Assembly (NCBI RefSeq): GCF_902713615.1
Contig: NC_052146.1
Coordinates: 25,774,135-25,838,134, forward strand
Origin: Scyliorhinus canicula
Taxonomy: Eukaryota
Length of the DNA stretch: 64,000 nucleotides
Direction of reading: 5' to 3'
Shown here: positions 4,736-29,158 of the stretch, one piece after another
Layout of the letters: each line of letters begins with the position of its first letter
Numbering within the stretch: the stretch's first letter is position 1
Notes under the pieces: generated by a model
Database searches by the model: none
What the model saw: only the letters and a program-made list of their open reading frames with translations
What the model was told of the DNA's origin: nothing
Position numbers and translations under genes: made by a program

Positions 4736-4930
4736 TTGGGGGATGTTTGTGACCATGTTTGAGGGGCTATTTGTCGCAGGGTGGGGGGGGTGCAGCGGAT
4801 GGGGGGAGAGTGAAAAAGGGAAAATATTTGTACAGACTGTGTAGTTGATTGCTGGGAAGTCTGTTTCCTCGGGTGTTTATTTCCTGTAACCTGTTTCGAT
4901 ATATGTTTGTAATAAACTACATTTTTTGAT
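4736..4930 (+). mobile_element. 3' end of an L1-like LINE (same insertion as 40997-42170)
   Basis: End of ORF2 (WGMFVTMFEGLFVAG), G-rich 3' UTR, AATAAA. Matches 41974-42170. Confidence 0.75.
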
Positions 4931-5059
4931 ATGTTTCTAAAAATAATTGTTCAATGGGTAGTAATGATTACTGGAAATACTTTCTATGATTAGTCGCAAT
5001 CCTCAATAAACTAACTTATGTAGAACTATTCTAGTGTTATCCTAGCTATCCAACTTTAA

Positions 5060-7996
5060 GGGGTCTCATCTCAGGACATCTCCCTTCAGTAGTGAGCGGG
5101 AAATGCCATGACCTTCCGGACCCTCGGCCTTCGAGAAGTGTGCCCTGGAGGTGACTGGGGTGGCTGAAGACAGAGCAGTCACCAACGCAGAGGCTGGCAG
5201 AGGTCGCAGAGATGAGGAATCACCCGCCTCGGCCAAAGGACCTGTCAAACATGAGTTGTTATTGCCTCACTGACTGACCCACCCCTCCGACTGGCCACAT
5301 TCTCCCACAGGTCCTCCAGCCGCCGGCACTGGCCCATTCCGGGTGGCCCCCTCCAGCCTCCCATGGGAACATCTCGGAGGAGAGCTCCGTGGATGCCACC
5401 ATAATAGTCACGGCACAGCTGTCATCCCCACCCTCCACCAGCAGAGATACACACACCTCGGTGGGAAATGTTAGTGGTCAGGCGACTGGGGCATAATCTG
5501 GTGAGCACCGCACTGCTGATGGTGCACATCAGGTAGAGGCAGAGACTCCCAGGTGAGACAATAGTTGGAGGTCTGCTCGATCCCAGGACCCAGTTGGGTC
5601 CCAGCCTAATGCTGAGCCTGTGGAAGAAGTAAACCCGGAGCTGATGGAGACATTAGGGAGTTGCCGGGACATTCAGAGGGAGATCTCAGCGACACTCCAG
5701 CAGATCCATAGCCGATTGGAGGAGTCCCAGAGGCTATGGGTGCAGGAAATGTTGCTGGCAATGTGTGGTACCGAGGCCAACACTGCTAGGGTGGCGACTG
5801 CAGTGGAGAGCCCAGTGCATGATGCCAGCATCATTGGTGAAGGTGTCCAAGGTGTCACACAGTCGGTGACAGCCATGGCGGAGGGCCCCGGCAGTATGAC
5901 AGCCTCGCTGGGGGATGTCACCCAGCGCCAGGCCCACCTTTCTGAGATTCTGCGGGACATTTCCCGCTCTCAGGTGGGCACTGCCGAGGTATTGTCCCAG
6001 TCATTGAGGAGCATCGCCGAGGGCATCGACACGATGGTGCGGGCCATGGGGAACCGCCAGGGTGGCAGAGCCAGATGATGCAGGGGCAGCCGGGGCTCGA
6101 ACCAGCTGTCCCTCTGTCCCAAGGTGAACCCCAGGGCCTTATGGGTACTACTCAGGTTGAGGGGACACTGTGTGTCCCATTGAGTGGCGACAATGGTCAC
6201 CAGCTCCCCCGAGTTCCGCCCCTCTGATGACACCGTGTCTCACAGTCAGCACACGGGACAGGGCGGCACGGCTGTGCATGTGCCGCTGACAAGTGAGCTG
6301 GGTCCCTCCGGCCCAAAAGCCCCAGAGGACGCCCGCCAAGGGCATCAAAGGCCACAGGATGACGTAAGCAGCTGGCTGCCTCCGAAGGATGTGGAAGCAT
6401 TGGAAAGGGTGCAGAGGAGATTTACCAGGATGTTGCCTGTTGCTGAAGGACTTAAGGCTGTTTTTGTTAGAGAGAAGGTTAAGAGGTGACTTAATTCAGG
6501 CATACAAGATGATCAGAGGATTAGATAGGGTGGACAGTGAGAGCCTTTTTCCTTGGATGGTGATGTCCAGCACGAGGGGACATAGCTTTAAATTGAGGGG
6601 AGGTAGATATAGGACAGATGTCAGAGGTAGGTTATTTACTCAGAGTAGTAAGGGCGTGGAATGCCCTGCCTACATCAGTAGGGGACTCGCCAACATTAAG
6701 GGCATTTAAATGGTCATTGGATAAACATATGGATGATAAGGGAATAGTGTAGATGGGCTTTAGAGGGGTTTCACAGGTCGGTGCAACATCGAGGGCCGAA
6801 GGGCCTGTACTGTACTGTAATGTTCTATGTTCTAACTCAGATGTGCATCCTGGGGACACACCTCGATGTAGTGGTAGAGTTAGGAAGGCCCAGCACATCA
6901 GGGATCACTGAGGGCACCAGGGGAGGGTGAGGGGTGGGTCGAGGGTAAGGGGGTGGTGGCAACATCGGGAGATTTGGGAAATGGTACACACAATAAACAC
7001 CCTTGTGCACAACCAGTATGATGCCTCTGTCACTTTCATCTGCAATCCGGGCCAACCTCAGAATCCTTGGTGCATCTCTCCAGGCATTCCCCCCCATGGT
7101 GGCATTCACCCACTCTCCTGCCATGGACATGGCCCCGGAGCTGTGTCCCATCCACTGGGTGTTCAGCTGTTGTGTGTGTGGTGTTGTCTCCTGCAGTGTT
7201 CAGGCACAGTGTCCATGCATCAAGGTGTGATTGGGTTGCTAGGCAATGAGTCCCCTGAACTACGTGGCCTACCCACCCACCGGAATCCACCTGGGTTGTG
7301 TGAAGTGCTCACCTAACCAAAATTGCCAATTCCTATTAGCAATAGCCTTCAGCTGCATGGCCCATATCCTCTGCAATCGATGGGGGTTATGGGGGGTCGG
7401 TGGGGCAGATGGGCAGAGACAAGGGTCACCCTCGGAATGGGTACCAGGGGATCCAGGGATTGGCATGGTGGAGCCACGCGCAGATGCCCCATGGTTGCCC
7501 CCCCCAAGGATCTCCCTCACCCTCCCACGGCAGTCCAATCCTGCGCAGGTTCCCCCCCCCCCCCCCCCCCCACACCCCCAACCCAGCTGAGGGTTCCTCA
7601 ACCTCCGCTGAGCACTGGGGTTGCAGGCCCAGCACCCTCGGGCTTTGCCTGTGAGAAAAGGTGGCTACTCACCTCCTCGGCTTCCCACAGGAGCCCTTCA
7701 GGTTTTTCAAAAGGAGCACTAATCGGCACCATGACCACTTGCTGGGGAGGCCGCTGAATGACAGGAGGCCGCTGGATATGGGGTCGCTCCTGTTAATTGT
7801 ATGGATATAGGGCTTAAATGGTGAGAAATGGCTTCTCTCCACATTACGGCGAGATCCCGATTTTGCCGACAGGTGTCGGCCGGTTGCATCGCCAGCAGTT
7901 TGGTGCCGAGCGTGGTTTTCATATTTGGCCTTTACTGCTATTCACAGGCCTCGTTTCCCTTCAGCGAGAGCGTAGCGAGGCCGGAGAATCATGCCC
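5060..7996. mobile_element. Degenerate Harbinger-like DNA transposon remnant
   Basis: Decayed coiled-coil-like frames (FEKCALEVTGVAED..., MEEVNPELMETLG...) and a terminal GGAGAATCATGCCC (7983-7996) resembling a TIR. Family call is from recall and unverified. Confidence 0.5.
6383..6834 (+). mobile_element. 5'-truncated CR1 LINE nested in the Harbinger-like element
   Basis: KDVEALERVQRRFTRMLP...RRLRGDLIQAYKMIRGLDRVD ORF2 C-terminus and TGTTCTATGTTCTA tail. Confidence 0.9.
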
Positions 7997-8179
7997 CTTG
8001 TGTCAACCTGTGCCCTCAACTCGTCTACCGTGTTTGTGATACTTGTAGCGTCACATCCCTGGATTTTGAGGCCAGAGTGTTTAGCGAGATAATTAAACTG
8101 CCTGGTGTGATGCAGTGTCATTTTATCGATTAGATTGTCCACTCCCTGGTGACAGCTTGGATCAGGCAGCTAATCCTTC

Positions 8180-8460
8180 TGAGTCACCGCTCAGCTAATT
8201 CTATTCTTGTTGTTTTTGATTGTGGCACCAGAGAGGAATCTGAAACGGAGCTAACTTGGAATTCAACACCTGTTACCTGTAACAAGATTCACTTTCTGTT
8301 CTGACTGGGAGCTTATTTCCCAGACTCTGGGTCGAGGCTTTGGGAAATGAAAGGTCAGCTCAGGTCTCAGTTGTTTGTTCTAACAGAGCAGGAGGGTGAG
8401 AGCTATCAGAGGGAAGGAGGGCAGTGACGTTCAGAAACTGTCTATGATAAGAAAAGGAGT
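8180..8460 (+). promoter_or_regulatory. Putative ISG15-A1 promoter
   Basis: AP-1 TGAGTCA 8180-8186, inverted IRF-like TTCACTTTC near 8288, GGAAATGAAA 8343-8352, TGACGTTCAGAAAC and an A-rich box. The proximal part aligns with the B promoter. Confidence 0.6.
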
Positions 8461-8685
8461 GAGGAGGGAGGTAGATATTCACTCACTTATTGAACAGAGG
8501 AAACACAGAAGATTCTGTGAGACACAGAGCAGTGGAAGCAGGCGGAGTTTTATTCACTGACTCCAGATCGGAGAGTTGGTGTCGAGCAAAACAGAGAAAA
8601 CAAACTGTACAGGAAGTGAACCTGTCATCAATCTGCAGATCAAAATTCTTCTGATTCACCTGAACTTGTGCATCCAGCAAGGATT

Positions 8686-9592
8686 GTGAGATATACTTCC
8701 CTTTTGTTTAAGAATCTCAATATTCTAATTCTAGTTTTTATATTGGGGTTTGAATCTCAATGAAATTCACAATTTAAAATAAGCTCTTAATATTCCCTGA
8801 AGTGGGACAGTGTTATAACCCACACAGGCCATACAGGGTTGGGATGATTAACTTCACCGTGGAGATTGCAGAATACGAGCTCCCCCGGCAGGGGGCAGGG
8901 GGACCTTTAACAACACTTGGCTTAGTCGAAATAGAAATGGTCAGTGAGGCAGCAACTGGAGAAGATCCAGTAGGGATCTACTGGAGCTGGATAACATAGT
9001 CATTGTAAAATAAAGTAAGTTTTTGTTTAGACCAACTCAGTGTGGACGTTTCGTTGCCCTTACAAAATACATTATAATTTTTTTAATTCTACGGCCATTT
9101 TCCTCCACTTACACACATTCCCTTACACTCTATTGATCAAGAGAAAACCCACAGAATTCCTGAGCCCATGTTCCCATCTCCTGATAAACCAAATTCCAAG
9201 ACTGAATCACATTACACAGCTCACTGAGAGCTACTACAGGCCGATGCCACTCTGCAGCTCAGCAGACAGATACTCCAGTTTCTGAATAGTTTAACAATGA
9301 TCAGGATACAGCAGCAAAGACACATCCAAATGCAAAAGGTGAACAGATAGGGAATCTGCTACTTTTTTCCAGGCTGGAAAGAAGCAGTTTGTGAAGATTG
9401 GTTTCTTTGGGATTCAGATATTGAGGAAGAAGCCAGATTTTGGGTTTATTGTAGCTGACATTTGAGTCTCAGTGTTTACAGCCAGTGACTGACACAATGT
9501 GTAGTGTGTATTAAATTCTCTCATTCATTCTTCGCAATTGACCTGCGAGATAAAGTGTCCCCATTAGTGACATCCTGTTCATTTCTCAACAG
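8686..9592 (+). other. Putative 5'-UTR intron of ISG15-A1
   Basis: Donor TT|GTGAGA lies near the position homologous to the B donor. Acceptor TTCATTTCTCAACAG ends at 9592, 12 nt before the ATG. The donor position is uncertain. Confidence 0.6.
8811..9064 (+). mobile_element. Possible solo LTR in the A intron
   Basis: TGTTA...TTACA ends and internal AATAAA. No convincing TSD. Second copy near 46655-46908. Confidence 0.35.
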
Positions 9593-9604
9593 CAATTTGA
9601 CAAG

Positions 9605-10072
9605 ATGAGACTCCAGGTGAAGTTTATGACCGGTGAGGATATTGAACTTGAGATCGACCCTTCCATCCAAGTCTCAGCTCTCAAGAAGATGATATATAAA
9701 AAAGCCAACGTTCCCCATTTCTGTCAGCGCCTGGTGGTACAAAATGGAAGCACAGAGGAGCTGAGGGATGACAAGAGGCTGTGTGACTACAATGTCTCTC
9801 CCAGCAATGTTGTCATGCTGATTGTCAAGAAGGAGGAGCGCATGCAGATATTCCTGAAGAACGAAAAGGGGAAATCAACTACATATGATGTTCTTCCCTC
9901 TGAGTCTGTTCAGGATTTTAGAGCACGCGTACAGCGGCAGGAGGGTGTCCCAGCCAATCAGCAGCGCCTGGTGTATGACAACAAACAGCTGGAGGATGGT
10001 CACTCACTCACTGACTACAATATTCAGTCTGAGAGCAACATCTCCCTTGCGTTGCGTCTACGAGGTGGTTAA
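9605..10072 (+). CDS. isg15: ISG15-like di-ubiquitin protein, type A copy 1 (155 aa)
   Basis: Two tandem Ubl domains. The second ([15 protein letters not shown]...QQRLVY...LEDG) resembles fish ISG15. Ends in a free LRLRGG. Intact ORF after a splice acceptor. Confidence 0.93.
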
Positions 10073-10893
10073 CATGAATTTTCAGCAATTAAGATCTCTG
10101 GATGTTACCAAAATAATTAATTTATCGTCTATCATTGATCATTTGTTTTTCATACGTTTCTGTTTTCTATTGTGTTGTTTGTTAGAGACACAAGATTGCC
10201 CAGTCACTGACCTTTTAATGATACCTTTGGTTCTTATTCCCAATTGCTCTGGTTCATTTTGTAAGTCCTGGATGTTTGTTCAACAGATAATGACTGGCGA
10301 GGGATTGATGCCAACTGAGGCCTGGATGCAGGTCACCTTCCTACATTCTCAGCCAGGAATAGATGCTGGTACAAGACATTGAACACAATTTTTACAAAGA
10401 ACAGCGACTTAATGAACAAGATAGGAGGAACGAGGGAACCAGTGATACATCGTGTCAGATTCTGATCAATGATTTATATTACAGCAGTTCAAATCAATAC
10501 TGCCTGATCACTGTTCTAAAGTTACTCTTAAAGATTCTTCAGAAGAGTTAAGATAATAATGGTCCAGTCCCTAATTCATTGACAGATCCAGACTGGCCTC
10601 CCATTCAGTGCTAATTCACCTTCTCACTCACAGCTGTTATGTCAATTCCAAAAATGTTTCACTTGCCAAACATTCCCCAGAAAAGATCAGAATAAGATCC
10701 ACAACCGTTTGCTTCCTGTTTCATTTACAAGTAGTTACTTTAGCCTGAATGTTTTCTTGGACAAATGGTTGGGTTCTGAATTGGGGTGTTTTAATCTGGG
10801 TGCTTCATGTTTTCCAATAGCTGAGGATATCAGGATTGCATTTTGTTCCTGCCAGATTGTTCAATGTGATTTGAAAGTAAAGCTGTTTATTTT

Positions 10894-10899
10894 AATAAA
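10894..10899 (+). terminator. Putative polyadenylation signal of ISG15-A1
   Basis: AATAAA followed about 30 nt later by GT-rich GTGTCTGTTGTTTTGTCTG. Retained in A2. Confidence 0.6.
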
Positions 10900-10949
10900 A
10901 ATGAAATGTGTGCTTACATCTCTCTGAAGTGTCTGTTGTTTTGTCTGCA

Positions 10950-11270
10950 TTAAAATTAAAATTAAATAGATCTTTATTATTGTCACAAGTAGGCTTACAT
11001 TAACACTGCAATGACGTTACAGTGAAAATCCCTGAGTCGCCACAATCCGGCGCCTGTTCAGGTACACTGAGAGAAAATTCAGAATGTCCAATTCACCAAA
11101 CAAGCACGTCTTTCACGACTTGTGGGAGGAAACCGGAGCACCCAGAGGAAACCACGCAGACACCGGGAGAACGTGCAGACTCCACACAGAGAGTGACCCA
11201 AGCCGGGAATCGAACGCAGGGCCCCGGCGCTTTGAAGTAACAGTGCTAACCATTATGTTACCGTGCCACC
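10950..11270 (-). mobile_element. V-core tRNA SINE with CTTGTGACAATAA tail
   Basis: Reverse-strand head GGGTGGCACGGTAAC and V core. Second copy near 48795-49114. Confidence 0.8.
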
Positions 11271-11844
11271 CATGAAAGAGGAGAGATTTCGCCCTTTGAC
11301 CCTGATCTGCCATTCAGCAAGATGACTGCTGATTAACCTCACTTCCACTTTCCCATACTCTTTCCATATCCCACATAAACCCACTCAACTCAGACATTTA
11401 AAATTAGGAATTTTACATTGCTCAGGGTACAGGTTATTGTGTGGCCAAAAGCACTTTTTCCACCCTCTCCTCAATCTGGACAAAAACTAAAATCATATAA
11501 TTGACATCACTGTTGGCAATGTGGAGATGCCATCGTGCTACCAGCCACAACACTGTAATCACTTCCGTGTTTATTCATAGTTAGGCTGACACAGGAAGTA
11601 TAAATAAAGGCCGTGCCTTTCATCATAGGGTCTGAGTCAGAATGGCCGAGTGACTCGGGGACATTTCATGGTAAATGTTTGCTAATTTGCATTCCAGTCA
11701 GTTACCTGTTGTAATGGCTGCAAAGAAATGACGCAAAGAACAAGGCAGGTGAAGAAACAGGGGCTTATTTTGGGCAAAACAACATTATATAGGACAATGA
11801 TACGAATGCTTTAAAACTCAACGGCTCCGAGACTCCATACGACC

Positions 11845-14840
11845 ATAAGACATAGGAGCAGAATTAGCTCACTCGGCCCATCGAGTCTGCTCCACCATTC
11901 AATCATGGCTGATATTTTCTCATCCCCATTCTCCTGCCATCTCCCCATAGCCCCTGATCCCCTTATTGATCAAAAACCTATCTATCACTGTCTCATAGAC
12001 ACTCAGTGATTTGGCCTCCACAGCCTTCTGCGGCAAAGAGTTCCACAGATTCACCACCCTCTGGCTGAAGAAATTCCTCCTCATCTCTGTTTTAAAGGAT
12101 CGTCCCTTTAGTCTGAGATTGTGTCTTCTGCTTCTAGTTTTTCCCACAAGTGGAAACGTCCTCTCCACGTCCACTCTATCCAGGCCTCGCAGTATCCTGT
12201 AAGTTTCAATAAGATTCCTCTTCATCCTTCTAAACTCCAATGAGTACAGACCGAACTGTCCTCATATGACAAGCTCTTCATTCCAGGGATCATTCTTGTG
12301 AACCTCCTCTGGACCCTTTCCAAGGCCAACACATCCTTGCTTAGATACGGGGACCAAAACTGCTCACACTACTCCAAATGGGGTCTGACCAGAGCCTTTT
12401 ACAGCCTCAGGAGTACATCCCTGGTCTTGTATTCTAGCCCTCTCAACATGAATGCTAACATTGCATTTACCTTCCTAACTGCCAACTGAACCTACACATT
12501 AACCTTGAGAGAATCGTGAATAAGGATTCCCAAGTCCCTTTGTGCTTCTGATTTCCTGAGCCCCTTCCCAGTTAGAATTTACTCTATGCCTCCATTTCTC
12601 CTTCAAAAAGGATAACCTCACACTTTTCCACATTGAATTCCATCTGCCACTTCTTTGCCCACTCTCCTAGCCTGTCCAAGTCCTTCTGCAGCTCGCCGGC
12701 TTCCTCAGTACTACCTGCCCCTCAGCAGATCTTTGTATCATCTACAAACTTAGCAACCGTGCCTCCAGTTCCTTCCTCCAGATCATTAATGCATATTCTG
12801 ACATCCTGAAAAAGACCCTTTATCCCCACTCGCTGCCTTCTGCCAGTCAGCCAATCCTCTATCCATGCCAGGATCTTACCCTGAACGCCATGGGCTCTTA
12901 ACTTATATAACAGTCTCCTATGAGGGAGCTTGTTAAAGGTCTTCTGGAAATCTAAATAAACATGTCCACTGGTTCTTCTTTGTCTAACTTCCTTGTCACT
13001 TCCTCAAAGAACTCTAACAGATTTGTCAGACATGACCTCCCCTTGATGAAGCCGTGCTGACTCAGTCCTATTTTATCATGCACTTCCAAGTACTCTGCGA
13101 TCTCATCTTTAATAATAGACTCTAACATCTTACCAATGACCGAAGTCAGGCTAACCGGCCTATAATTTCCACTCTTCTGCCTCACTCCCTTCTTAAACAG
13201 TGGTGTTACTTTGGCCACCTTCCAGTCCTCTGGGACCCTTCCTGCCTCCAGTGATTCCTGAAAGATCATCGCCAATGCCGCCACAATCTCCTGAGCTGTC
13301 TCTTTTAGAACCCTGGGGTGTAGTCCATCCGGTCTAGGTGATTTATCCACCTTCAAACCTTTCAGTTTCCTCAGAATCTTCTCCTTAGTAATGGTTACTG
13401 CACTCACCTCTGCCCCCTGGTTCTCCTGGAGCTCTGGCATCCCACTGGTGTCTTCCACCATGAAGACTGATGCAACGTAACTATTCACGGGGAATTTCAG
13501 GGACTATTCAGTTTGTCTGCCATTTCTTTGTTTCCTACTTCTCCATCCACATTTTCCAGTGTTCCAATGTCCATTTTTCCCTCTCTCTTACCTTTTATAT
13601 ATTGAAAAAACTCTTCCTATCCTCCTTTATATTACTGGCTATCTTGCACTCATACTTCATCTTCTTCCCCCTTATTGCTTTTTTAGTTGTCCTCTGCTCA
13701 CTTTTAAAGGCTTCCCAGTCCTCTGGCTTCCCACTAATCCGCGCCACCTTGTCTGCTTTTTCTTTAGCTTTTATGCGGTCCTTGACTTCCCTCGTCAGTC
13801 ATGGATGCCTTGTCCTCCCTTGAGCACATTTCTTCCTCCTTGGGATTAATTTCTGTTGTGCCTCCCGAATAACCCCCAAAGATTCCTGCCATTGTTATTC
13901 CACTGTCTTCCCTGCTCGGCTCCTTTTCCAATCAACTCTGGCCAGCTCCTCCCTCATGTCTTTGTAGTTACCTTTATTTAATTGTAATACCGTTACATCT
14001 GATTGCAGCTTCTCCCTCTCAAACCACAGGGTTAATTCTATCATATTGTGGTCACTGCTCCCTGAGATTCCTTCACCTTAAGTTCCCTAATCAAGTCTGC
14101 CTCATTACACATCACTAAATCCATAATTAACTGTTCCCTAGTAGGCTCTGTCACAAGCTTCTCCAAAAAACCATCTCTTATACTTTCCACAAATTCCTTT
14201 TCTTGGGATCCACGACCAACCTGATTTTCCAAGTCCACCTGCATTTGAAGCCCCCCATGATTATTGTAATATTGCCTGTTTTACATGCCTTTTCTATCTC
14301 CTGATTTATTTTCTGCCCCACATCCTGACTACTGCCAGGGGACATGTACATAACTCCCATCAGGGTCTTTTTACCTTTGCTCTACCCAGCTTTTACCTCA
14401 ACTCTACCCACGGAGATTCCATGCCTTCTGATCCTATATCACTCCTTGCTATCGATTTAACTTCATTCCTTACGAAAAATGCAAGCCCGCCCTCTTTGTC
14501 TATCTGCCTGTCCTTTCGATTGGACGCATATCCTTCGGTATTTAGATCCCAGCCTTGAGCCCCTTGCAGCTACGTCTCTGTGATGCCCAAAACATCACAC
14601 CGGCCAATTTCAATGTGTGCAACGAGCTCATTTACCTTGTTCCGTATATTGGCCGCATTAAGGTACAACACCCTCAATCCTGCATTGACGCCCTCCCTTA
14701 TCACACTTGTCACCTTTTTGCTCTGCCTGAGGGTGATGTAGTTCTTTTATTTTGGTTCTCTAATTCCCCTTCAGTTATTACACCTTCTAAGCTCACATTT
14801 TGGTTCCCCCCCCCCCCCCCCATATTAGTTTAAATCCTCC
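11845..14840 (-). mobile_element. Degenerate CR1 LINE (EN and RT)
   Basis: KSPRPDGLHPRVLKE, GNYRPVSLTSVIGK, QHGFIKGRSCLTNLLEFFEEVT, RRNFFSQRVVNLWNSLP, TCTTATG-type tail. Confidence 0.92.
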
Positions 14841-16080
14841 CGAGTGAACTCCAACTGTCAAACACTCTGTCCACCCCGTGCTCAATTTGCACGCTTCACC
14901 GCGATTGGCCCAATGGGTCATGTGGCTCCCAGAAACTCACCCACCTGCCAAAGGGACACACCGTCACACATGTTTACACATGTAGCGTCATGCTTTAATG
15001 ATGGCTACTCAAACGGGTCAGTTTAATCTGAATATAAATGCAACACACTAAGTCTTGTTCTGTGTGTTTTTAAAGCAGAGATCATTTCCTTGGATTGCCG
15101 GATTGTCCTGGTGGAGAGGCTTGAATGTTCCGTTGATCCTGGGAGCAATGCCATCAGGAATCGTAAACTCCTGACAGGGTCAGCGTGACGGTAAGGTCGG
15201 AGGGGAGGATCCAGACAAAGTGCAATCCAAAACAAGTCCTCAACAGTGGATTGGGGGAAGAAACCCATATGGTATCAATGGCTGCAATGGCGGATGAAGC
15301 CCGCAGCAGGAGGGAGATCCCCAGTCATCGAGGTTCCCTTGTCACTGAAACTGGACCTACCCTTTGTCAAGGACCGTGCATCTGCTGATGTGCAAAGGCA
15401 TTCCCACGTTAATAGATGTCCTGCACCAGGCGTCTACCTGAAGGAAACCACACAGACAAGGCCTGCAATGATCGGCGAGAGGTGACAGGGACAGGACCCT
15501 GAGAACCGGAAGTCCCTAGCTTCGACTGGAATGTAGGTGGTGGAGTTTGATTCAGTCGTCTCACTCTTGGAATAGGAATAGGAGAATGTTTTGGCAGTTT
15601 TCTTCATGATTGAGTAGCCCTCTTCGGGATCCACTTTGTTCACCCTGCATGGGGAAAGGATTGGAAAAGGTGCCCTAAAAATAGTCTGTTGCTTCCTCAA
15701 CCTGACAGGAAGACCCCATCCAGCAGACTCATCTACCTGTGGTCGGAAAATCAAAGTTAGACTCAATTTGGGAACCTGGAATGTACAAACCCTCATGGAT
15801 TGGATTGGATTTGTTTATTGCCATGTGTACCGAGGTACATTGAAAAATATTGTTCTGTGTGCAGCTCAGACAGATTATTCCGTACATGAAAAGAAAATAC
15901 TTAATGAGGTAATGAGCAAAACAATTGACTGGAACGGAGAACTGCCCTTGTTGCCCATGAACTCAGGCAAAGTACAGCTGAGGAAATAAGTCGCTGATTA
16001 CACCTTCTTCTGGCGATGAAAACCTGAGGTTCAGCCAGAGATGCATGGACTTGGATTAACCATCAACAATAAACTTGTGG

Positions 16081-19000
16081 GACTTCCGGTGGCAACGTGT
16101 AGGTGGAAGTCGCACGTTAGGTGGCTCCTGTTAGAGTCTTTGTATTTTTGGTCTTTATCGCCAGTCTCAGGGGTACGTTTTGGATGAGTTGTTGAGGGAA
16201 GTCATAAGGAGTCAGTGGAATGTCGAAGTTCCAGAAGGAAGGTCCTGGAAAGAAGTGGGTGAGTGAATTTCCGCCGGCGAGTGTTGCTGTGAGTCCAGCA
16301 GGAGGAAAGATGGCAGGGGGCTGGTTCGTCAGGTGGGGCCGCTCCCATCACGGTTGAAATTCTGACCGGGGTGGTGTCGGGGCAGTTTGAAAGGCTGTTC
16401 ACCAAACATTTAGAGGCGCTTCGGAGGGAGATGACGGATTGGCTGAAAGAGTGGGTGGAGGAGATGCTTGCCCCGATAAAGGTTGCATTAATGAAGCTGT
16501 TGTTTGAGGTGCGGGACCAAGGAGAGAATGAAAGGGGTAAAGGAGCATTGTCGCAACTTCGCGACCAGTTCACCTCGATGGGTGAGGAGCTGCGCAGGGT
16601 GGCGGAGGTCAATAAAGGGCTAAGAGCCATGGTGGGCGACCTGGAGAACAGGTCAAGGAGTCAGAATTTGTGGATCTTGGCTGTGCCCGAAGGGGTGGAG
16701 GGCACAAGGCTGACCCGAGTATTTTGCGAACATGTTCTCCATGTTGGTGGGGGAGGGGGGAAGAACCCTCCCTCCATGAGTTGGACAAGGAGCATTGGTC
16801 AGTCCAGCTGAAGCCTGGAATAAATGAGCCACCAAGCACGGCCATAGTCTGCTTCTACAGCTACCACGTGAAGGGGAAGGTTTTGAGCTGGGCGAAGCAG
16901 AAGCGGAAAATGAAATGGGAAGACGTTGGGATTGGTATATACCTAGATCTGACAGTGGAATTGGTGAAAATACGGCCGGCCTTTGGACGGGTGAAGGCAG
17001 CACTGTACAGCAGTGGGGTGAGGTTCAGAGTGGTCGCCCCAGCGGAGCCACGAGTGACTCACAACTCAAAGGCCTTTTACTTTGAGACGGCGGAGATGTT
17101 CTTTAATGCTGAAGAACTGGGACTGAGATGAGAGTTGGGATCTGAACTTTGATGGTGTGGACTGGGAATGTTTTTTTTAGCTTGTTTCCTAGATTGATTT
17201 TTTGTCAAGGGGGCGTTTTTGCATGTGTTCTTGTTTCTTGTTATGCATGTGTTTTTATGTTGTTTAGGGGATGCGGTCTCCCTACTCTGGCGGTATGGCT
17301 AGGGGGGGTTGGAGTTGGCGGTTGGTGGGAGTGTGGGATGGGGCGTTGGAGGGGGTTTGGTATGATGATCCACGTTGCTGAGGGTGTGGTGGGGTGGACG
17401 GGGGGCTCTCGCAGGGGTCACCACGCTAGCGAATGAAGGTTGGGTAGTGAACGGCAGTGTGGAGGGGGGAGGGGCCGTGGGCATTGGAATCTGGTCGAAC
17501 AGGTTTCAATGGACCTGGAAGGTGTGAATGGTTGGCGGAGCAGATTGATACTGGGTGAGGTGTTTGCAAGAGGACGTGGATGGGATTTTGGGAAAGGGGA
17601 TGGGGGTCGGGGATGGGTAACAGAGGGAGGGGGCCGGTCCAGTGGATGGGTAGGGCGTGGGGTAATGGTGATGGCAGTTAGGAGGGCAGCGAGGGGGGGG
17701 TGAGACACTCCTGGTCAGAATGGTGACGTGGAACGTGAGGGGGTTAGGGATACCCATGAGTTGATTTTGTGGGGTGGGAGGGATTGGAAGACAGCGCTCG
17801 AGCCGAGGGTGGAAATGTCCCAGCCAAGCTCGCTGACCCCGTCCGGGGGGTGGGGGGTGGGGGGGGGGGGGGGGGGGGGCAGGCATATGAGGGAGGTAGG
17901 GGTTGACCCATGGAGATTTTTACACCCGAGGGATCGGGAGTATTCTTTTTTATCCCGCAGCGCAATGTCTTCTCCAGGATTGACTTCTTTATGGTGGGGT
18001 AGGCGCTCTTGGATGGAGTTAAGAGGGCCGAGCAATCAGCAATTGTGATCTTGGACCACGCACCACACTGGATGGACATGGTACTGGAGAAGGGCTGGCC
18101 CAGAAACTGGGGTGGAGGATGGATGTGGGGCTGTTGGCGAACCGGAGATTCTGTGATAAGAAAGGAAGGTAATTGAGGAGTATGTGGTTCAATGTTTGGC
18201 CGAGGTCTCGCCGTCAGTGGGTTGGGAAGCCCTGAAGGCAGTGTTGAGGGGGGAGTGATCTCTTTTCAGGCTAAGGTGGATTGGGAAGAGAGAGAGGAAC
18301 ACCAACGGGTGATAGAAGAGGTTTTGGAGGTGGATGGGAGGGATGCGGGGGACCCGGATCCAGGTCTCCTGGTAAAGAAGGAGCTGCAGGTGAGGTTCGA
18401 CCTGCTGTCCGGAGGGAAAGCGAGGCATCAGCTGAGCTGGGTGAGAGGGACAGTCCGTGAATAGGGGGAGAAGGCGTGTTGTATGTTGGGAAGCCAGCTT
18501 CGCAGGAAGGCCACAGCAAGGGACATTGTTTGGTTTTGGGATAGGATGGGGGAGTTGGTGGTGACTCTGGAGTGGATTAACAAGGTATTTGAGGAGTTTT
18601 ATAGGAGCTTGTATAAGTCGAAGCCACCAGAGGATGATTGGGAGGTAAGGGTTGTTTTGGAGGGGTTAGAGTGCCCGAGGTTGAGTGAATTGGGGAACGT
18701 GGGGCTGGAGGAGCCAGTGGGGCCAGAGGAAATGTAGGTGGCAATTGAGAAGATGCAGGCGGGGAAGGTGGCAGGGCCGGATGGGTTCCCGGTTGAATTT
18801 TATAAGAAATTTAAGGACAAGCTGGCACCATAGTTGGTGGAAATGTTCGAGGACGCGATGGTCAGGGGGAGTTTGGTGAAAATGATGGGACTGGCCTCCA
18901 TTTCGTTGCTGCCTCAGAAGGATAAGGACCCGGTGGAGTGTGGGGCTTCCAGGCCCATATCTCTGCTGAATGGGGACGCCAAGATATTGGCAAAGATGTT

Positions 19001-21022
19001 GGCGTTATGGTTGGACACGTGCCTTCCGAGGGTGATTGGGGAGGATCACACGGGGTTTGATAAGGGCAGATATGTGGCTGCTGAATGTGGTGCTTTCTCC
19101 AGCAGAGGGAAGGGATTTGGAGGTGGTGATGGCATTAGATGTGGAGAAGGCGTTTGATCGGTTGGAGTGGAGTTATTTGATCGCAGTGTTGGGGAAATTT
19201 GAAATGATGCACAGTTTGTGAAATGGGTGCAGTTGTTGTATAAGGAGCCGATGGCGAGCGTGCACATGAATGATAAGAATTGATGGTATTTTTTATTGCA
19301 CTGCGGAACGAGATGGGGTGCCCCATGTCTCCCCTTCAGTTTACATTAGCTATCGAGCCCTTGACCATTGCCATTCCGTCTGGCAGTGTCTCACTTTAGG
19401 TATCTGGGGGTTCAGATAGCCGGGGACTGGGCAGGTATTCGGAAGTTGAATTCCTCCAGCTTGGTGGGGAGGGTGAAGGCCAACTTGGTGAGGTGGGAGG
19501 GTGAAGGCTGATTTGTCGAGTTGGCACAATCTTCCTCTGTTATTGGCGGGCCGGGTTCAGGGAGTGAAGATGAAGACATTTTCTCGTGATTTTTGTTTCT
19601 GTTTCGATGCCTGCTGGTCTTTTTGCCAAAGACATTTTTCAAAGGGGTTGACCGACTGATCTCTTTGTTTGTCTGAGTAGGGAAGGTGGCCAGGATAAGG
19701 AAGGTGGTGTTGATGAGGGAACAGCAGTCAGAGGGGTTGGGCCTTCTGAATCTGATGTCCTATTATTGGGTGGCGAATGCAGAGAAAGTTCAGGGGTGGG
19801 ATAGGGAGACGGGGGCTTTGTGGGAAGGATGGAGGCGAGCTCATGTCGGGGGTCGAGGGAGCAGACACTGGCAATGGTACCACTCCCGATGGCCCCAGGG
19901 AAGTATTTGGTAGGTCCAGTCGTGGTGGCCATGCTGAAGATTTGGAGGCAGTTTCAGCAGCATTTCAGGTTGGGAGTGAGGTCGGGGGGATGCCAATCAG
20001 GGGAAATCACGGATTTGAGCTGGGGAGGATGGGTGTGAGTTTGCAGGGATGGGAGGAGAAGGGGATTCCCTCAGATGAAGCATTTGTTTCTGGGAGGGTG
20101 TTTAGGTTGGGGCGGCAGGAGAGATTCCGGTGCATGCCAGTGCTGGACTTTGTGAGGAAGGTATTCCCAATAGCACGTGCCTCATCGTTGCTGAAGGTGG
20201 TGCTGTCAGCAAGGGGAAGGGGGTTTTGGAGAAGGGGATTGTCTCAGCGATTTATGGGAGGATTTTGGAGGAGGGTAAGGTGTCTATGGAGCGGGGGATA
20301 AGGCCAAGTTGGAGGTAGAGCTGGGTCAGCACTGGAAGAGGGGTTTTGGTGTGAGGTGCTGTGGAGGGCGAATGCCTCGACCTTGTGTGCGAGGCTGGAG
20401 CTGATGCAGCTGAAGGTAGTGTGCAGAGCCCACCTGACCAAATCAAGGATGAGCCGGCTGTTTGAGGGGGTGGATGAAGTCTGTGAGCAACGTGGGAGGG
20501 GCCCTGTGAACCATGTACATATCGTTGGGTCTGCCCAGAGTTGGAACGGTTTTGGAGGTTGATTTCAGCACCATTTCGAGGCTGCTGCATGTGGATGTGG
20601 AGCCCTGTCCCCTAGAAGCCATATCCGTGTTCTCCGACCAGCCAGAACTGCAGATGGGTGTGGGGACAGATGTCTTTGCCTCGCACGTCGGTCTTGTTGA
20701 GGAGGGGGTTAGCTTCTCCACCCTGTGCCTCGGCATGGCGGGGGGACCTGCTGGAATTCTTAGCCCTGGACAAGGTGAAATTGCTCTCGGGGTTGGGGGG
20801 GGGGGGGGGGGGGGGGCAACGAGTGATGGGTTCTACAAACTTTGTGGTTTGTTCATTTTGCATTTTGGGGAGTTGGTTACCATTAACTGCTGAGGGAGGG
20901 GTGGGAGGTAGGAGGGATGAAGGGGCAGGCATGGGTGGGTGGGGGGGTTTAAAGTGTTGGGTGGGTTATTGTTGCAAAATGTTAAAATGTTGAAAATTCA
21001 GAATAAAAATACTTTTTAAAAA
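16081..21022 (+). mobile_element. Near full-length degenerate L1-clade LINE inside the RTE EN domain
   Basis: GACTTCCGG 5' end. ORF1 LENRSRSQNLWILAVPEGVEG. ORF2 VTWNVRGLG, RPISLLNGDAKILAK, ALDVEKAFDRLEW. AATAAA at 21002. Degraded TSD (AACAATAAACTTGT / GACAACAAACCCGT). Confidence 0.88.
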
Positions 21023-22865
21023 GACAACAAACCCGTCAACCGACCCTCAGAGCTTCCTTCCGGTATCAATGAGTGCCTCAGGACCCTCTGTCTGCACCTT
21101 ATGAATAACCAGCGGGCAACATTTGTGACTGCCTACACCCCAACCCTTGATGCCAATGACAAGCCCAAAGAAGGCTTCTACCCCACCCTGGACATCGTAC
21201 TCTCCAACACTCCTGAGGAAGATACGATCATCCTCCTTGCTGACTTCAACAGCAGGGTTGGAAGAGACTTCTAAATTCTTGGAAGGAATCATTGGAAAGG
21301 AAGGAGTTGGGAATTGCAACTCCAACAGTGTTCTTCTGCTCACTAAATGCACAGAACACCAGTTTGTTGCATTTCTCCGCCAAATAGACAAGTTTCAGAC
21401 TTCCTGCAGACACCCACGATCAAAGAACTGGCAGATGATTGACCTCATCATCATCTGATCCCGAGGCAAAAGGACGATCAATGCAGATGCCTTCTAGACC
21501 ACCAGCTCATCTGTTCCACTGTGCCCATCAAACACGCAGCGAAAGATGAAGAAACAACTCAGTAAAAAGATCAACATTGAGCGGCTTCATGAGTCAAGCA
21601 TGCTCATGAATTTCCAACACTGTCATCTCCAAAATCTCCAAAGTGTCCATTCTAATGGAGTAGAGGAAAACTGGAAAGAGCTGAAGACAACCATCATCCC
21701 AAGCTGTGAAGAATCCATGGTCTACAAGTCCAGGAAACACCAAGACTTGTTTGACAAGAATAACCACACCATCGAGGGTCTCATTGACAAGCGGAGGAAA
21801 ACTCTCCAGTCCTGGCAAAATGGAACAACCAACAAGGCAAAGAAGAGAGCTCATCACTCAGCCAAGGTGGAGGTACAAAGGAGAACCAGGGAAATCAAGA
21901 ACGAATGGTGGACTGAGAAGGCTAAGGGACTGCAACTCCTCGCCAACAAGCACGACAAGCGGACCTTCTTCAGTGCCACCGAGACAATATATGGACCCAA
22001 TACCATAGGCCTCAAACTGGTGCAGAGTAAGGACAGAATCCTCTTGGGAGACAAAGAAAACATAGGCCTTTGATGGAGAGAACACTTCAAAGAACTCCCG
22101 AACTGTGATACAAACATAGATGAAGGTGTGCTTGAGGAAATCCCCAATTCCCCACCAAAGATCATCTTGGACTCCCTGAAAACTTGGATGAAGTTGAAGC
22201 CGCCATTAAACAAACGAAGAATGGAAAAGTTGCAGGTGTGGATGGGACTCTATCAGAGATTTTCAAGTTTGGAGGAGAAGAGATCACCGGTCATCTCCAT
22301 CAGCTGTCCCTGAAAATTTCAGACAGAGAAAAAATTCCTGTCATCACCGTCATCTTCAAGAAAGGAGACAAAGTGGACTGTGGCAACTACCGAAAATCTC
22401 TCTACTCTCCATCGCGGGAAAGATTGTTGCCTGAATCCTTGCTAGCTCCCTTCTCCCAGTATCTGAAGAAATCCTCCCGGAAAGTAAGTCTGGGTTCCGA
22501 TCAAACTGTGGAACTGTGGGCATGATTTTCACTGATCCACAACTTCAAGAGAAATGCCAGGAGCAACATTCTCAACATGGCCTCCATCGATCTGACCAAG
22601 GCTTTTGACTCAGTCAATGGGGAAGTGCGATGGAAGACCTTGCCAAAGGCCCATTGTCCAGAGAAATTCAGCAACATCCTCTGTCTCCTCCACGATAAGA
22701 TGTTGCTGACAGTCCTCACCAACGGAAATAAGACAGAAACTTTTGAGGTCAAGATTGGAGTCAAGCAGGAATGTGTTATCACCCCCACCCTTTTCTCCAT
22801 CTTCATCGCCATCATCCTTAACCTTGTCAAGACACGTTTCCCAGTGGAGTGGACATCGCCTACAG

Positions 22866-23920
22866 CAGAGAATCCCAACTGGTGTGCCATGAAGGCCTCA
22901 CAAGTGTTCCGCAAAATACAGTTCAAAATGATTACATATTAGTACAATATAAACTAAATCTAATCTTCGTTTTCAGCTCTGTGATTGGCATCTCCCAGAT
23001 GAACCTTAGGCCTCCCACACATGCCGGCTGGGAATGAACCACACATTCATGGTTCAGAATCCTTCACAATGGTCATGCGCATGGGCCTAACCGATGGAAA
23101 AAATCAGAACTGCACATGTGTGACCCTTTCCGTCTGGCACACGCATTGTTCAGATTACCAACATAAAACATTGCAAACCACGTATGTACTGACCATTCTG
23201 GTGTCAATGGCGCTTGCGCAGGAGATCCCACAGAGTTGAAGGCAAAGGCCCCTTGCGGCTGCGCAATAAGCAAGAACACAAAAATGCCTCAAAAGCCTGG
23301 GAGATACGAGGGATTCAGGGAGAGACTGGGGGAAAAAAGAGGAGAAAAGACAGAGGGAAGTGAAAAAAAAAATATTCCCAGTAAGGGAAGAACTCAGGGG
23401 GAAGAAACAGGAACCAATAAAGTTAAGAAAAGGAGAAACAGTCTCCATGATTATATTTGACATTATAAACCCTTCAGGAGACCTGAGAAGGTGATACAAA
23501 CACAGGCTTATTCTTCAGGCAGAGTGGCATACAGCACATCGATCTCAGCCAGGACCACCGATCTCACCAGTCCCAATTTGGGCCGGCTTTTAAGTGTTAT
23601 TTTCACGGACTCCAGCCGCTCGGCCTCTACCCCTCAGCAGAGGAGCTCGTATTCACTGAGGTCCCACAGGGAGATCAATTGGGTCGTCCACGTGGGTCTT
23701 GTGAGGTTATTACAGACATGCAAGTTAAGGAAGCGATGGCTTTCATTGTAAACTTCTAAAACCTAATAAAAATTGTATTAAATAGTGGCTTGACATGTTT
23801 TTGGAGGTTTCAGAAATAAAAAGCTTTAGCAAGAGGGTAGTTGGGGAAAATAGGAGGTGTACCTCAAAATGTTTACAGTATAAAAGTGTGCCATGGCGTA
23901 AAAAATGTTAGGAACCACTG
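22866..23920. mobile_element. hAT/Charlie-like non-autonomous DNA transposon
   Basis: Ends CAGAGAATCCCAAC ... GTTAGGAACCACTG are imperfect TIRs. 8-bp flanks are GCCTACAG/GGGTACAG. The RTE motif GVDIAYR|VDGKHFNL rejoins on excision. Confidence 0.7.
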
Positions 23921-25887
23921 GGGTACAGGGTGGATGGAAAACATTTCAATCTCAATGGGCTGAAATCCAAGAAGAAAATGACGCTGACATCACTCGTGGA
24001 ACTTCAGTTTGCGATGACATCGCCATCTCCACTCTCTTGGAAGAGAATTTCCTGGCCATGCTGATGCTCGACACTCTCACGGAAGATTAACAAAGAATCA
24101 GCCTCAGCCTCAAAAAGATTCAAGTCCTCTACCAACCCGCCCCAGGGCAAGCCTGGTCACTCTCTCCATCAAGATTAAAACCAGACAAAACATGGAACAT
24201 TTCTCCTACCTGGGCAGCCACATTTCATCTAAGGCTGATATCGATCCAACATTGTATCCAATCTATGAGCTCCTCCTTTGAACGAGGGACTTTGACGACT
24301 GTGAAATCCGTGCTGACACCAAGATCCTCTTCCAACTCTTCTGTATGACTCAAAAGCTTGGACTAGATAGACACCACTTCAAGGCCCTAGAGAGGTACCA
24401 TCAACGGACTAGCAAATGGTGGGAAAGGAAGGCCTCAGGGGCGCTCCATATACTACCAAAAACAAGTAACAAGGTGCCTAGTTCCCATGCTATTGGAGAT
24501 GGACTCTACATATCAGCTGGGAGGACAGGCGTACGATCATCAGAGTCCTTGAGGGAGCCAAGAGCACCAGCTTTGAGGCCATGATCATCCACAACCAACT
24601 CCACTGGGCCGGCCTGATGCTTAGGATGTCAGAGTGCCGACTGCCAAAGCAAATCTTCTTCGCCCAGCTCAAGGAAGGTTCCCGAACAAGAGGAGGACAA
24701 AGAAAGTTCTTCAAAGATACATTGAAGGCTTTCTTCAAGAAATGTAGCATAGACAGTAAAGCCTGGGAGACCCTTGCTCAGAAGAGACCTGCTTGGAGGA
24801 ACATCCTGATTGAGAGAACATAATTCTTCCAGGACACCCAACAACAAAACCAGACCAGGAAAAGAACCTGAGAAAGTAATACCAGAGATCTTGGATTGGA
24901 TTGGCTTATTGTCACATGTACTGAGGTACAGTGAAAAGTGTTTTTCTGCATGCAGCTCAAACAAATCACTTAGCGCATGAAAAGAAAATACATAATAGGG
25001 CAACACAAAGTACATAATGTAAATACATAGACACCGGCATCGGGTGAAGCATACAGGAGTGTATTATTGATCAAATCAGTCTATAAGACGGTCGTTTAGC
25101 AATCGCAAGGCAGCGGGAGGTGTAGATAGAGTCAATGGGTGGGAGGCAGGTTTATGTGATGGACTGGGCGGTGTTCAAGACTCTCTGAGGTTTCTTGCGG
25201 TCTTGGGCCGAGCAGTTGCCATACCAGGCTGTGATGCAGCCAGATTGGATGTTTTCTATGGTGCATCTGTAAAAGTTGGTAAGAATCAATGTGGACATGC
25301 CGAATTTCCTTAGTTTCCTGAGGAAGTATAGATGCTGATGTGCTTTCTTTGTGGTAGCATCGGCGTGGGTGGAGCAGGACAGATATTTGGAGATGTGTAC
25401 CCCTAGGAATTTGAAACTGCTAACCATCTCCACCTCGGCCCCATTGATGCAGACATGGGTGTGCAGTACTTTGCTTTCTGAAGTCAATGACCAGCTCTTT
25501 AGTTTTTCTGACATTGAGGGAGAGATTGTTGTTGTTACACCACTCCACCAGGTTCTCAATCTCCCTCCTGTATTCTGACTCGTCGGTGTTGGAGTTCCGA
25601 TTCACTGTGGCCATGTCATCAGCAAACCTGTAGATGGAGTTGGAGCCAAATTTTGCAATGCAGTCGTCTGCGTAAAAGAAGTATAGCAGGGGTCGAAGTA
25701 CGCAGCCTAGCGCGGCCCCGATATTGAGGACTATCATGTGTAGTTTTTACCTCACCACTATTCTTAGAATTCCCCCTATACCAAAATGGGTAGGTTTATT
25801 CTAAATGGTGAGCAGGGATTCTCACTCCCCGACTCCTACGCAGACTTAGGCGGGTGCTATTCAGGTCAAACTAGTGTCTCAAGTTGT

Positions 25888-29040: not shown

Positions 29041-29084
29041 GTGTTCAGTCAAAGATGTGGCTCTAGGATTGGGCTCATCAGCAA

Positions 29085-29127: not shown

Positions 29128-29158
<31 letters not shown>

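What the first reader, a model, noticed from the sequence alone, without database searches (positions are those of the whole stretch)
9977..10072. A/B differences hit the K48-equivalent loop and the C-terminal recognition strand
Seen: A has D125-N126-K127 and N145-I-S147-L-A149. B has E-G-R and T-I-F-L-T. By alignment, 125-127 match ubiquitin A46-G47-K48, and 147/149 match ubiquitin H68/V70 (human ISG15 F149/N151). B keeps the canonical EG and T-x-F pattern but has Arg at the K48 position. A loses the conserved Gly and Phe but has the Lys. Established: this surface around the I44-equivalent patch and tail is bound by E1, USP18-type proteases and viral OTU/PLpro deISGylases. Inference: A may evade viral deconjugases, use other partners, or differ in chain formation.
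Basis: partly seen in the sequence, partly recalled or inferred. Interest (0 to 1): 0.7.

Follow-up and report, generated by a model that had tools for sequence, protein, structure and literature searches.

The report
Two catshark ISG15 types differ on binding face
The small-spotted catshark keeps two intact, transcribed versions of the antiviral ubiquitin-like tag ISG15, and one has three changed residues on the exposed face that activating and removing enzymes grip, but nothing here shows that it behaves differently.

Summary
The window is from Scyliorhinus canicula and holds four intact 155-aa ISG15 genes (A1, B1, A2, B2), each ending LRLRGG-stop. A has D125-N126-K127 and N145-I-S147-L-A149. 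B has E-G-R and T-I-F-L-T. The mapping onto ubiquitin 46-48 and 66-70 is ungapped.

Comparison with S. torazame splits the finding in two.
- The strand-5 triad (T145N, F147S, T149A) is a derived A-type signature found in both species. It sits on the exposed face, and the buried residues and the tail are unchanged.
- The K48-equivalent loop is not a stable A/B difference. S. torazame A and B both carry E-S-K. Arg at this position is the rule in the teleost ISG15s sampled, and Ser at 126 occurs in skates and teleosts.

A and B coding sequences are partly homogenised by gene conversion. dN/dS between them is about 1, so positive selection is not shown. A does not look like a decaying gene. Its CDS is about five times more conserved than its flanks, it evolves between species at the same rate as B, and it is transcribed and spliced. 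It is usually far less abundant than B and lacks B's ISREs.

The human-numbered positions 149-151 contact UBE1L and set nairovirus OTU species preference. Altered recognition is therefore plausible but untested. The chain-formation idea has no support. I class this as a new member of a known kind, of moderate interest.

The parts
9605..10072 (+). A1 coding sequence (155 aa ISG15, type A, ends LRLRGG-stop), all in exon 2
   Evidence: ORF and translation. Two Pfam ubiquitin domains. AlphaFold model with pLDDT 90.7.
9977..9985 (+). Codons 125-127 (D-N-K in A, E-G-R in B), equivalent to Ub A46-G47-K48, in the loop after strand 3
   Evidence: strand 120-124 followed by a loop. The difference is specific to S. 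canicula.
10037..10051 (+). Codons 145-149 (N-I-S-L-A in A, T-I-F-L-T in B), the last beta strand of the C-terminal domain. Positions 145/147/149 correspond to Ub T66/H68/V70 on the exposed face.
   Evidence: strand 145-150. The A-type triad is shared with S. torazame A.
8526..8690 (+). A-type exon 1 (5'UTR only), at least this stretch
   Evidence: A contig in run X15 joins 8526-8688/8690 to 9591/9593.
8691..9592 (+). A-type 5'UTR intron (902 nt). A1 has AT at the donor where A2 has GT. A possible alternative donor GTGAGA lies at 8686.
   Evidence: Joint, sequence, A1/A2 alignment.
10073..10738 (+). A-type 3'UTR, at least this stretch, with no similarity to the B 3'UTR
   Evidence: Contigs at depth about 117 (X1) and 3-8 (X15). 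A/B homology ends near 10114.
30887..31354 (+). B1 coding sequence (155 aa ISG15, type B)
29581..29670 (+). Three consensus ISREs upstream of B1. There are none at the homologous place upstream of A.
   Evidence: 6 matches in the window against 0.38 expected, all upstream of B. Alignment.
47448..47915 (+). A2 coding sequence (type A; Q103R and T136A relative to A1)
58749..59216 (+). B2 coding sequence (protein identical to B1)
57433..57522 (+). Three consensus ISREs upstream of B2
4736..36231 (.). Duplication unit 1 (A1...B1). Unit 2 is 41974-63939, at about 97-98% identity. Unit 1 carries about 10 kb extra (17750-27829).
   Evidence: Self-BLAST.

Best explanation
A and B are two long-lived ISG15 paralog types in a tandem array of the catshark. 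Both encode the mature protein directly (LRLRGG-stop) and both are kept intact. Gene conversion repeatedly homogenises the middle of the coding sequence between the types. Two islands stay type-specific in both Scyliorhinus species: N-domain residues 32-49, and the strand-5 triad 145/147/149. In type A the triad is derived (T to N, F to S, T to A). It changes only the outward-facing side chains of the last strand, making the I44-patch-equivalent face smaller and more polar. The core (I146, L148, L150), V123, R121 and the tail are untouched. Type A has also lost the ISREs that B retains, and it is usually expressed at a much lower level.

The most likely working model (inferred, not shown) is a conjugation-competent ISG15 variant under different transcriptional control. 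Its affinity would be shifted for proteins that grip this face: the E1 adenylation domain, deISGylases and viral OTU/PLpro-type proteases. The differences in the K48-equivalent loop are recent changes specific to S. canicula, on both paralogs, at a position that varies freely among vertebrate ISG15s. They are not a type-defining feature.
For: Shown:
- Four intact ORFs with the residues as described.
- The organism and further copies are identified: three A and four distinct B proteins in S. canicula, plus A, B and one chimera in S. torazame.
- Nine positions separate A from B in both species: 32, 34, 35, 37, 40, 49, 145, 147, 149. A-type proteins of both species form a clade in both domain trees (98/99 and 100/94).
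- S. torazame A and B are identical over residues 50-144.
- Derived K76 is shared by S. canicula A and B, against N76 in S. torazame and outgroups.
- A1 and B1 share a 124-nt identical run (P=0.006).
- Flanks are barely alignable while the CDS is 94% identical. This fits gene conversion.
- A1/A2 CDS divergence is 0.64% against 3.05% in flanks (P=0.0012). B1/B2 shows the same pattern (0.43% against 1.88%, P=0.019).
- Between-species protein distances are equal for A (8-10) and B (9-11).
- A-type transcripts are seen: a spliced exon1-exon2 contig, 3'UTR contigs, and an exact A contig at depth 106 against 281 for B in run X1.
- ISREs lie only upstream of B.
- Strand 145-150 is modelled with pLDDT above 90.

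From papers:
- Human T125/F149/N151 contact the UBE1L adenylation domain.
- Positions 89, 130 and 149-151 drive OTU species preference.
Against: - dN/dS between A and B is 0.85-1.0 overall and about 1 within both islands. There is no statistical signal of adaptive change, and the islands could simply be tracts that conversion has not reached.
- Ser at 147 is the native state in manta and stingray ISG15, and position 149 varies widely. The changes may therefore be functionally tolerated and neutral.
- The low CDS divergence between A1 and A2 also holds at synonymous sites, so conversion among A copies could explain it without selection.
- A-type letters at the strand-5 codons themselves were not seen in the four runs laid. 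Contigs break there, and the two raw-read runs showed only B letters.
- A1 itself has a G to A change at the donor used by the observed A transcript.
- No binding, charging or cleavage data exist.
Confidence: 0.5

Rival explanations
1. Neutral paralog divergence. The strand-5 triad and the loop changes are drift at tolerant surface positions of a fast-evolving protein. They persist only because gene-conversion tracts happened not to cover them. Under this reading A and B proteins are functionally interchangeable, and only the promoters differ.
For: - dN/dS is about 1 overall and within the islands.
- Positions 126, 127, 147 and 149 vary among chondrichthyan and teleost ISG15s (S147 in Mobula, Q/H in skates, D/E in teleosts, R127 in teleosts).
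- The clustering scan statistic gives P=0.33.
- The strand-5 island lies at the 3' edge of A/B homology.
Against: - T145 (Ub T66) is Thr in all 18 non-A sequences of the 20-sequence alignment, and only A types carry Asn.
- All three strand-5 changes fall on the outward face while the buried residues are unchanged.
- The same islands survive in two species despite conversion after their split.
- The one copy in which the C-terminal island was converted (S. torazame P0056) also has a damaged tail, LRLQGG.
Confidence: 0.33
2. Type A is a decaying copy on its way to becoming a pseudogene. It would have lost its interferon-responsive promoter elements and be accumulating random changes in the recognition surface.
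For: - There are no consensus ISREs upstream of A.
- A is much lower than B in most runs and undetected in two raw-read RNA runs.
- A1 has a donor +1 G to A change.
- A scores lower than B against the Pfam ubiquitin model (114 against 125 bits).
Against: - All five A-type ORFs known (three in S. canicula, two in S. torazame) are intact with LRLRGG.
- The A CDS is about five times more conserved than its flanks.
- A evolves no faster than B between species.
- Spliced A transcripts exist, at about a third of the B level in one run.
- Core residues are untouched and the model is confident.
Confidence: 0.08
3. The K127 (A) versus R127 (B) difference changes the ability to form K48-like ISG15 chains.
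For: The only support is positional equivalence to ubiquitin K48.
Against: - S. torazame B has Lys, so R127 is not a property of type B.
- All nine teleost ISG15s aligned have Arg at this position.
- The review read mentions only ISG15-ubiquitin mixed chains on ubiquitin K29, not ISG15-ISG15 chains.
Confidence: 0.03

Closest known systems
Teleost tandem ISG15 paralogs (e.g. Lates calcarifer LcISG15A/B, PMC9680060)
   Same: Two neighbouring ISG15 genes. Each has two exons with the whole protein encoded by exon 2, two Ubl domains and a C-terminal LRGG motif. The catshark A gene has the same structure. The catshark proteins carry Arg and Gln at the positions where mammals have Trp and Pro, as described for fish ISG15.
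   Different: In seabass both genes keep ISREs. In the catshark only B does. The catshark array has more copies: at least seven distinct proteins. It also shows concerted evolution, with type-specific islands shared by two species. No C-terminal extension is present in either type.
Mammalian ISG15 (human 7s6p/1z2m, mouse 5chv in complex with USP18)
   Same: The predicted two-domain arrangement superposes best on ISG15 structures (TM 0.72-0.79, rmsd 2.9-3.8 A). The LRLRGG tail is present. B has ISRE-bearing promoters.
   Different: Identity is only 32-35%. The W123/P130 hydrophobic patch recognised by USP18 IBB-1 is absent, with R121/Q128 in its place. The C-terminal domain resembles ubiquitin more closely, aligning without gaps over all 76 residues, and identity to linear di-ubiquitin is 42%. 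No propeptide needs to be removed.
Species-specific ISG15 recognition by nairovirus OTUs (PMC6927636)
   Same: The positions that differ stably between A and B (shark 147 and 149, human 149 and 151) are among the five positions shown to drive OTU species preference.
   Different: That work compares orthologues from different species. Here the variation is between paralogs within one genome. No virus of catsharks with a deISGylase was examined here.

Membership tests
ISG15 | Two tandem ubiquitin-like (beta-grasp) domains in a protein of about 155-165 aa | tested here: met
   Pfam ubiquitin domain twice, in both A and B. AlphaFold model with pLDDT 90.7 shows two beta-grasp units. The best whole-model TM scores are to ISG15 structures.
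ISG15 | C-terminal LRLRGG conjugation motif | tested here: met
   All four ORFs end in LRLRGG followed directly by a stop codon.
ISG15 | Nearest full-length relatives outside the group are annotated ISG15 | tested here: met
   Teleost and turtle 'ubiquitin-like protein ISG15' at 43-47% identity with full coverage. NCBI names the shark proteins 'polyubiquitin-like'.
ISG15 | ISRE-bearing, interferon-inducible promoter | tested here: inconclusive
   B has three consensus ISREs per copy. A has none, and at the homologous place the motif is broken by a 1-nt deletion and substitutions. Induction itself was not tested.
ISG15 | Fish-type gene structure: non-coding exon 1, with the whole CDS in exon 2 | tested here: met
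   For A, a spliced contig joins 8690 to 9593 and the ATG is at 9605. This matches seabass ISG15.
ISG15 | Activation by UBA7/UBE2L6 and removal by USP18 | not testable with these tools
ISG15 (mammalian type) | Trp123/Pro130 hydrophobic patch recognised by USP18 IBB-1 | tested here: not met
   Both A and B have R121/Q128. These are the polar residues reported for fish ISG15.
Polyubiquitin (NCBI's automatic name) | Head-to-tail repeats of near-identical 76-aa ubiquitin | tested here: not met
   Identity to linear di-ubiquitin is only 42%. The N domain matches ubiquitin weakly (about 35 bits against single ubiquitin chains), against about 84 bits for the whole A1 protein matched through its C domain (residues 80-155) to single ubiquitin chains. 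The two domains are unlike each other.

The most novel reading that the evidence does not exclude
Type A is an ISG15 variant kept by host-virus conflict. Its re-surfaced strand-5 face (N145/S147/A149) would lower cleavage by viral OTU/PLpro-type deISGylases, or by host USP18, while still allowing E1 charging. Its ISRE-less promoter would give a differently timed or constitutive pool of protease-resistant tag. Selection would protect the type-specific islands from the gene conversion that homogenises the rest of the gene.
Probability: 0.15. Interest if true: 0.65.

Novelty: new member of a known kind. Interest (0 to 1): 0.35.

Why it matters
ISG15 is one of the fastest-evolving antiviral effectors. 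Differences between species at human positions 149-151 decide which viral proteases can strip it off. Here the same positions differ between two paralogs inside one genome, in the oldest jawed-vertebrate lineage. The two types also have different promoters. If the types differ in charging or cleavage, this would be a natural experiment on how ISG15 recognition surfaces diversify. It would also give a simple three-residue swap to test.

The papers I found do not describe shark ISG15. The practical result for annotation is that these 'polyubiquitin-like' genes are ISG15, and that the K48-loop difference should not be read as a property of either type.

Tried and rejected
- Cross-species codon analysis was not possible. 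The look-up of encoding contigs returned no DNA for the S. torazame genes because the files are too large. All between-species work is therefore at protein level, and no branch or site model could be run.
- Clustering of differences as evidence on its own is rejected. The scan statistic gives P=0.33.
- Positive selection is not supported. dN/dS is 0.85-1.0. This rejects omega of 0.3 or less (P=0.004) but not 1.
- A deep origin of A/B, shared with the lamniform copies that carry K32/A34/N35/S49, is unresolved. It is not rejected (p-AU 0.35), but the free tree groups all Scyliorhinus copies together at 71/85.
- Modelling A and B with catshark UBA7, UBE2L6 or USP18 was not done.
- The Rfam scan of the window found nothing.
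The A-type letters at codons 145-150 could not be confirmed in reads.

Full report
**What is in the window**

The window comes from a 313.6-Mb chromosome record of Scyliorhinus canicula. Exact look-up places the window's proteins on that record. The window holds four intact 155-codon ORFs on the + strand: A1 9605-10072, B1 30887-31354, A2 47448-47915 and B2 58749-59216. Each ends in LRLRGG followed directly by a stop codon.

Each protein has two Pfam ubiquitin domains. The best full-length relatives outside cartilaginous fish are teleost and turtle proteins annotated as ISG15, at 43-47% identity. An AlphaFold model of A1 (pLDDT 90.7) superposes as a whole best on solved ISG15 structures (TM 0.72-0.79, rmsd about 3 A). 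It fits linear di-ubiquitin poorly (TM 0.46-0.55), although sequence identity to di-ubiquitin is higher (42% against 32-35%). NCBI names these genes 'polyubiquitin-like'. They are ISG15 of the fish type, with R121/Q128 where mammals have the Trp/Pro patch.

**Checking the observation**

Residues 80-155 align to ubiquitin 1-76 without a gap. So 125-127 correspond to Ub 46-48, and 145/147/149 correspond to Ub 66/68/70. The latter are human ISG15 147/149/151, by the equivalence given in PMC10693564. In the model 145-150 form the last strand, and 125-126 form the loop after strand 120-124.

A1 and B1 differ at 27 nucleotides and 19 residues. Those sites were chosen after looking. A scan for the densest 25-residue window gives P=0.33, so the clustering alone is not beyond chance.

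**Genomic setting**

The window is a tandem duplication of an A...B unit, 4736-36231 against 41974-63939, at about 97-98% identity. A and B resemble each other only over the coding exon and a few dozen bases on each side. The CDS is 94% identical. The promoter and exon 1 are about 64% identical, and the rest of the flanks do not align.

**Comparison with other species**

The 90% clusters hold three A proteins and four distinct B proteins from S. canicula. They also hold A, B and one chimeric protein from S. torazame. Tabulating the variable columns gives the key result.

- *Stable differences.* Nine positions separate A from B in both species: 32, 34, 35, 37, 40 and 49 in the N domain, and 145, 147 and 149 in strand 5.
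- *The loop.* Residues 125-127 do not separate the types across species. S. torazame A and B both read E-S-K (one B reads Q-S-K). S. canicula A reads D-N-K, and S. canicula B reads E-G-R or E-S-R.
- *Direction of change.* Against the shark consensus (Y-E-G-K ... S-T-I-F-L-x), A is derived at 126, 145, 147 and 149. B is derived at 127.
- *Trees.* A-type proteins of both species form a clade in trees of either domain (98/99 and 100/94). The A/B split is therefore older than the two species. Whether it is as old as the lamniform copies that share K32/A34/N35/S49 is unresolved.

**Concerted evolution**

Several observations point to gene conversion acting after the species split.

- S. torazame A and B are identical across residues 50-144.
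- S. canicula A and B share derived K76 where S. torazame and the outgroups have N76.
- A1 and B1 share a 124-nt run with no difference at all (permutation P=0.006).
- Synonymous divergence in the CDS is only about 0.06, while the flanks are saturated.

Conversion homogenises the middle of the gene, while the islands at 32-49 and 145-149 stay type-specific in both species. One S. torazame copy (P0056) has an A-type N domain joined to a B-type strand 5. That copy also has LRLQGG and three other private changes. This shows what a degraded copy looks like in this family.

**Is A decaying?**

The evidence says no.

- A1 and A2 differ at 3 of 468 coding bases (0.64%) against 98 of 3211 flank bases (3.05%; Fisher P=0.0012). 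B shows the same contrast (0.43% against 1.88%, P=0.019).
- Between the two species A proteins differ at 8-10 residues and B proteins at 9-11. A is not evolving faster.
- All five known A ORFs keep the tail, along with V123, R121 and the buried I146/L148/L150.

On the other hand, dN/dS between A and B is 0.85-1.0 overall and about 1 within both islands. It rejects omega of 0.3 or less (P=0.004) but not 1. Adaptive change is therefore not demonstrated. Part of the CDS conservation could come from conversion among A copies rather than from selection.

**Expression and regulation**

The 1-kb stretch covering the B CDS and 3' flank is held at 0.58-0.80 of its sampled words in 18 runs from 8 studies. 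The A stretch reaches 0.39-0.44 in only five runs and about 0.2 elsewhere. About 0.2 is what I estimate the stretches of CDS identical between A and B would give.

Reads were laid on 8000-11500 at 90% likeness.

- *Run X15.* One contig joins exon 1 (8526-8690) to exon 2 (9593), removing a 902-nt 5'UTR intron, at depth 8.5. A-type 3'UTR contigs lie at depth 3-8. A B-type CDS contig lies at depth 487.
- *Run X1.* An exact A-type contig over the N-domain island has depth 106, against 281 for the B form. An A-type 3'UTR contig has depth 117.
- *Raw oligo-dT runs X20 and X21.* X21 has a few CDS reads and X20 only one or two. All show B letters, and none lies on the A 3'UTR.
- *Limits.* A-type letters at codons 145-150 themselves were not seen, because contigs break there. 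X1 and X15 are not on record as RNA. The spliced contig argues that X15 is RNA.

The consensus ISRE (GAAANNGAAAST) occurs six times in the window against 0.38 expected. All six lie in two triplets upstream of B1 and B2. At the homologous sites upstream of A the motif is broken. This agrees with an earlier first-reader note of the scan (s1-200309).

A1 has AT where A2 has GT at the donor used by the observed transcript. That transcript probably comes from A2 or A3. A GTGAGA lies 5 nt upstream in A1.

**What the changed positions do in known systems**

- *E1.* In the UBE1L-UBE2L6-ISG15 structure, the adenylation domain contacts the T125/F149/N151 patch. This is the counterpart of ubiquitin I44/H68/V70 (PMC10693564).
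- *Viral OTUs.* For nairovirus OTUs, ISG15 positions 89, 130 and 149-151 strongly contribute to species preference. Changing human 89/149/151 to fish-like or mouse-like residues reduces or abolishes cleavage by several OTUs (PMC6927636).
- *USP18.* USP18 binds only the C-terminal domain. Its IBB-1 pocket takes the Trp/Pro patch, which is Arg/Gln in fish (PMC6240716 and PMC12410001). A and B are identical at those two positions.

The stable A/B difference therefore lies on a face that is functionally relevant. It is not at the best-known USP18 determinant.

The wider alignment tempers the claim that 'conserved' residues were lost.

- Position 147 is F in sharks, S in manta and stingray, Q or H in skates, and F, D or E in teleosts.
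- Position 149 is L, M, V, T, H or Q.
- Position 126 is S in skates and some teleosts.
- Position 127 is R in all nine teleost sequences aligned.
- The truly unusual A-type residue is N145. All 18 non-A sequences in that alignment have Thr.

**Verdict**

- The strand-5 triad is a stable, derived signature of a maintained and transcribed ISG15 paralog. That paralog has also lost its ISREs. An altered fit to E1, deISGylases or viral proteases is a reasonable but untested consequence.
- The K48-equivalent loop is a recent, species-specific change at a freely varying position. The chain-formation idea has no support. The only chains mentioned in the review I read are ISG15-ubiquitin mixed chains on ubiquitin K29.

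Tandem ISG15 paralogs with the same gene structure are known in teleosts (PMC9680060). I found no paper describing shark ISG15. I class this as a new member of a known kind, of moderate interest.

Noticed in passing
window 8686-8692 (A1) versus about 46530 (A2): A1 has AT at the 5'UTR intron donor where A2 has GT (GTGAG|ATATAC against GTGAG|GTATAC). The spliced A-type contig seen in run X15 carries 2 letters unlike A1 in its exon-1 piece, about the number of A1/A2 differences I estimate there from the alignment, so it probably comes from A2 or A3. A possible alternative donor GTGAGA lies 5 nt upstream in A1.
   Followed up: partly
window 29581-29670 and 57433-57522: There are three consensus ISREs (GAAANNGAAAST) upstream of each B gene and none upstream of A, six in the window against 0.38 expected. 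At the homologous sites A has GGAAA-TGAAAGG (a 1-nt deletion) and GGAATCTGAAACGG.
   Followed up: partly
S. torazame protein P0056 (not in the window): This is a chimeric ISG15 with an A-type N domain and a B-type strand 5, with LRLQGG in place of LRLRGG and three private changes. It is a likely product of gene conversion that is now degrading.
   Followed up: partly
window 9751-10073, run X1 contig: A highly covered transcript contig is A-like at codons 91-92 but B-like from codon 99 on, with E-S-R at 125-127. It matches none of the listed proteins exactly, so the array holds further mosaic copies.
   Followed up: no
window 10925-11275: This is a very high-copy repeat. Summed contig depths are in the hundreds of thousands, and hundreds of raw RNA reads per position fall on both strands. 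Many reads start at 11032. It is probably a SINE-like element. Rfam found nothing there.
   Followed up: no
window 1-3040: A 3-kb GC-rich minisatellite with units of 9, 16, 25 or 41 nt (GGAGCAGCG...) generates long spurious ORFs in several frames.
   Followed up: no
window 33973-34349 and 61450-62056: A 46-nt tandem repeat has 8 copies in duplication unit 1 and 13 copies in unit 2, so copy number has changed since the duplication.
   Followed up: no
window 17750-27829: Unit 1 carries about 10 kb that is absent from unit 2. This stretch and its surroundings contain reverse-transcriptase-like ORF fragments (for example 12952-13488 and 27895-29244), so a retroelement insertion or deletion is likely.
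   Followed up: no
A-type residue C40 (window 9722-9724; 47565-47567): All A-type proteins of both Scyliorhinus species have Cys at position 40, where B has Arg and other sharks have Gln or Arg. This is an extra surface cysteine in the N domain, in addition to C60.
   Followed up: no
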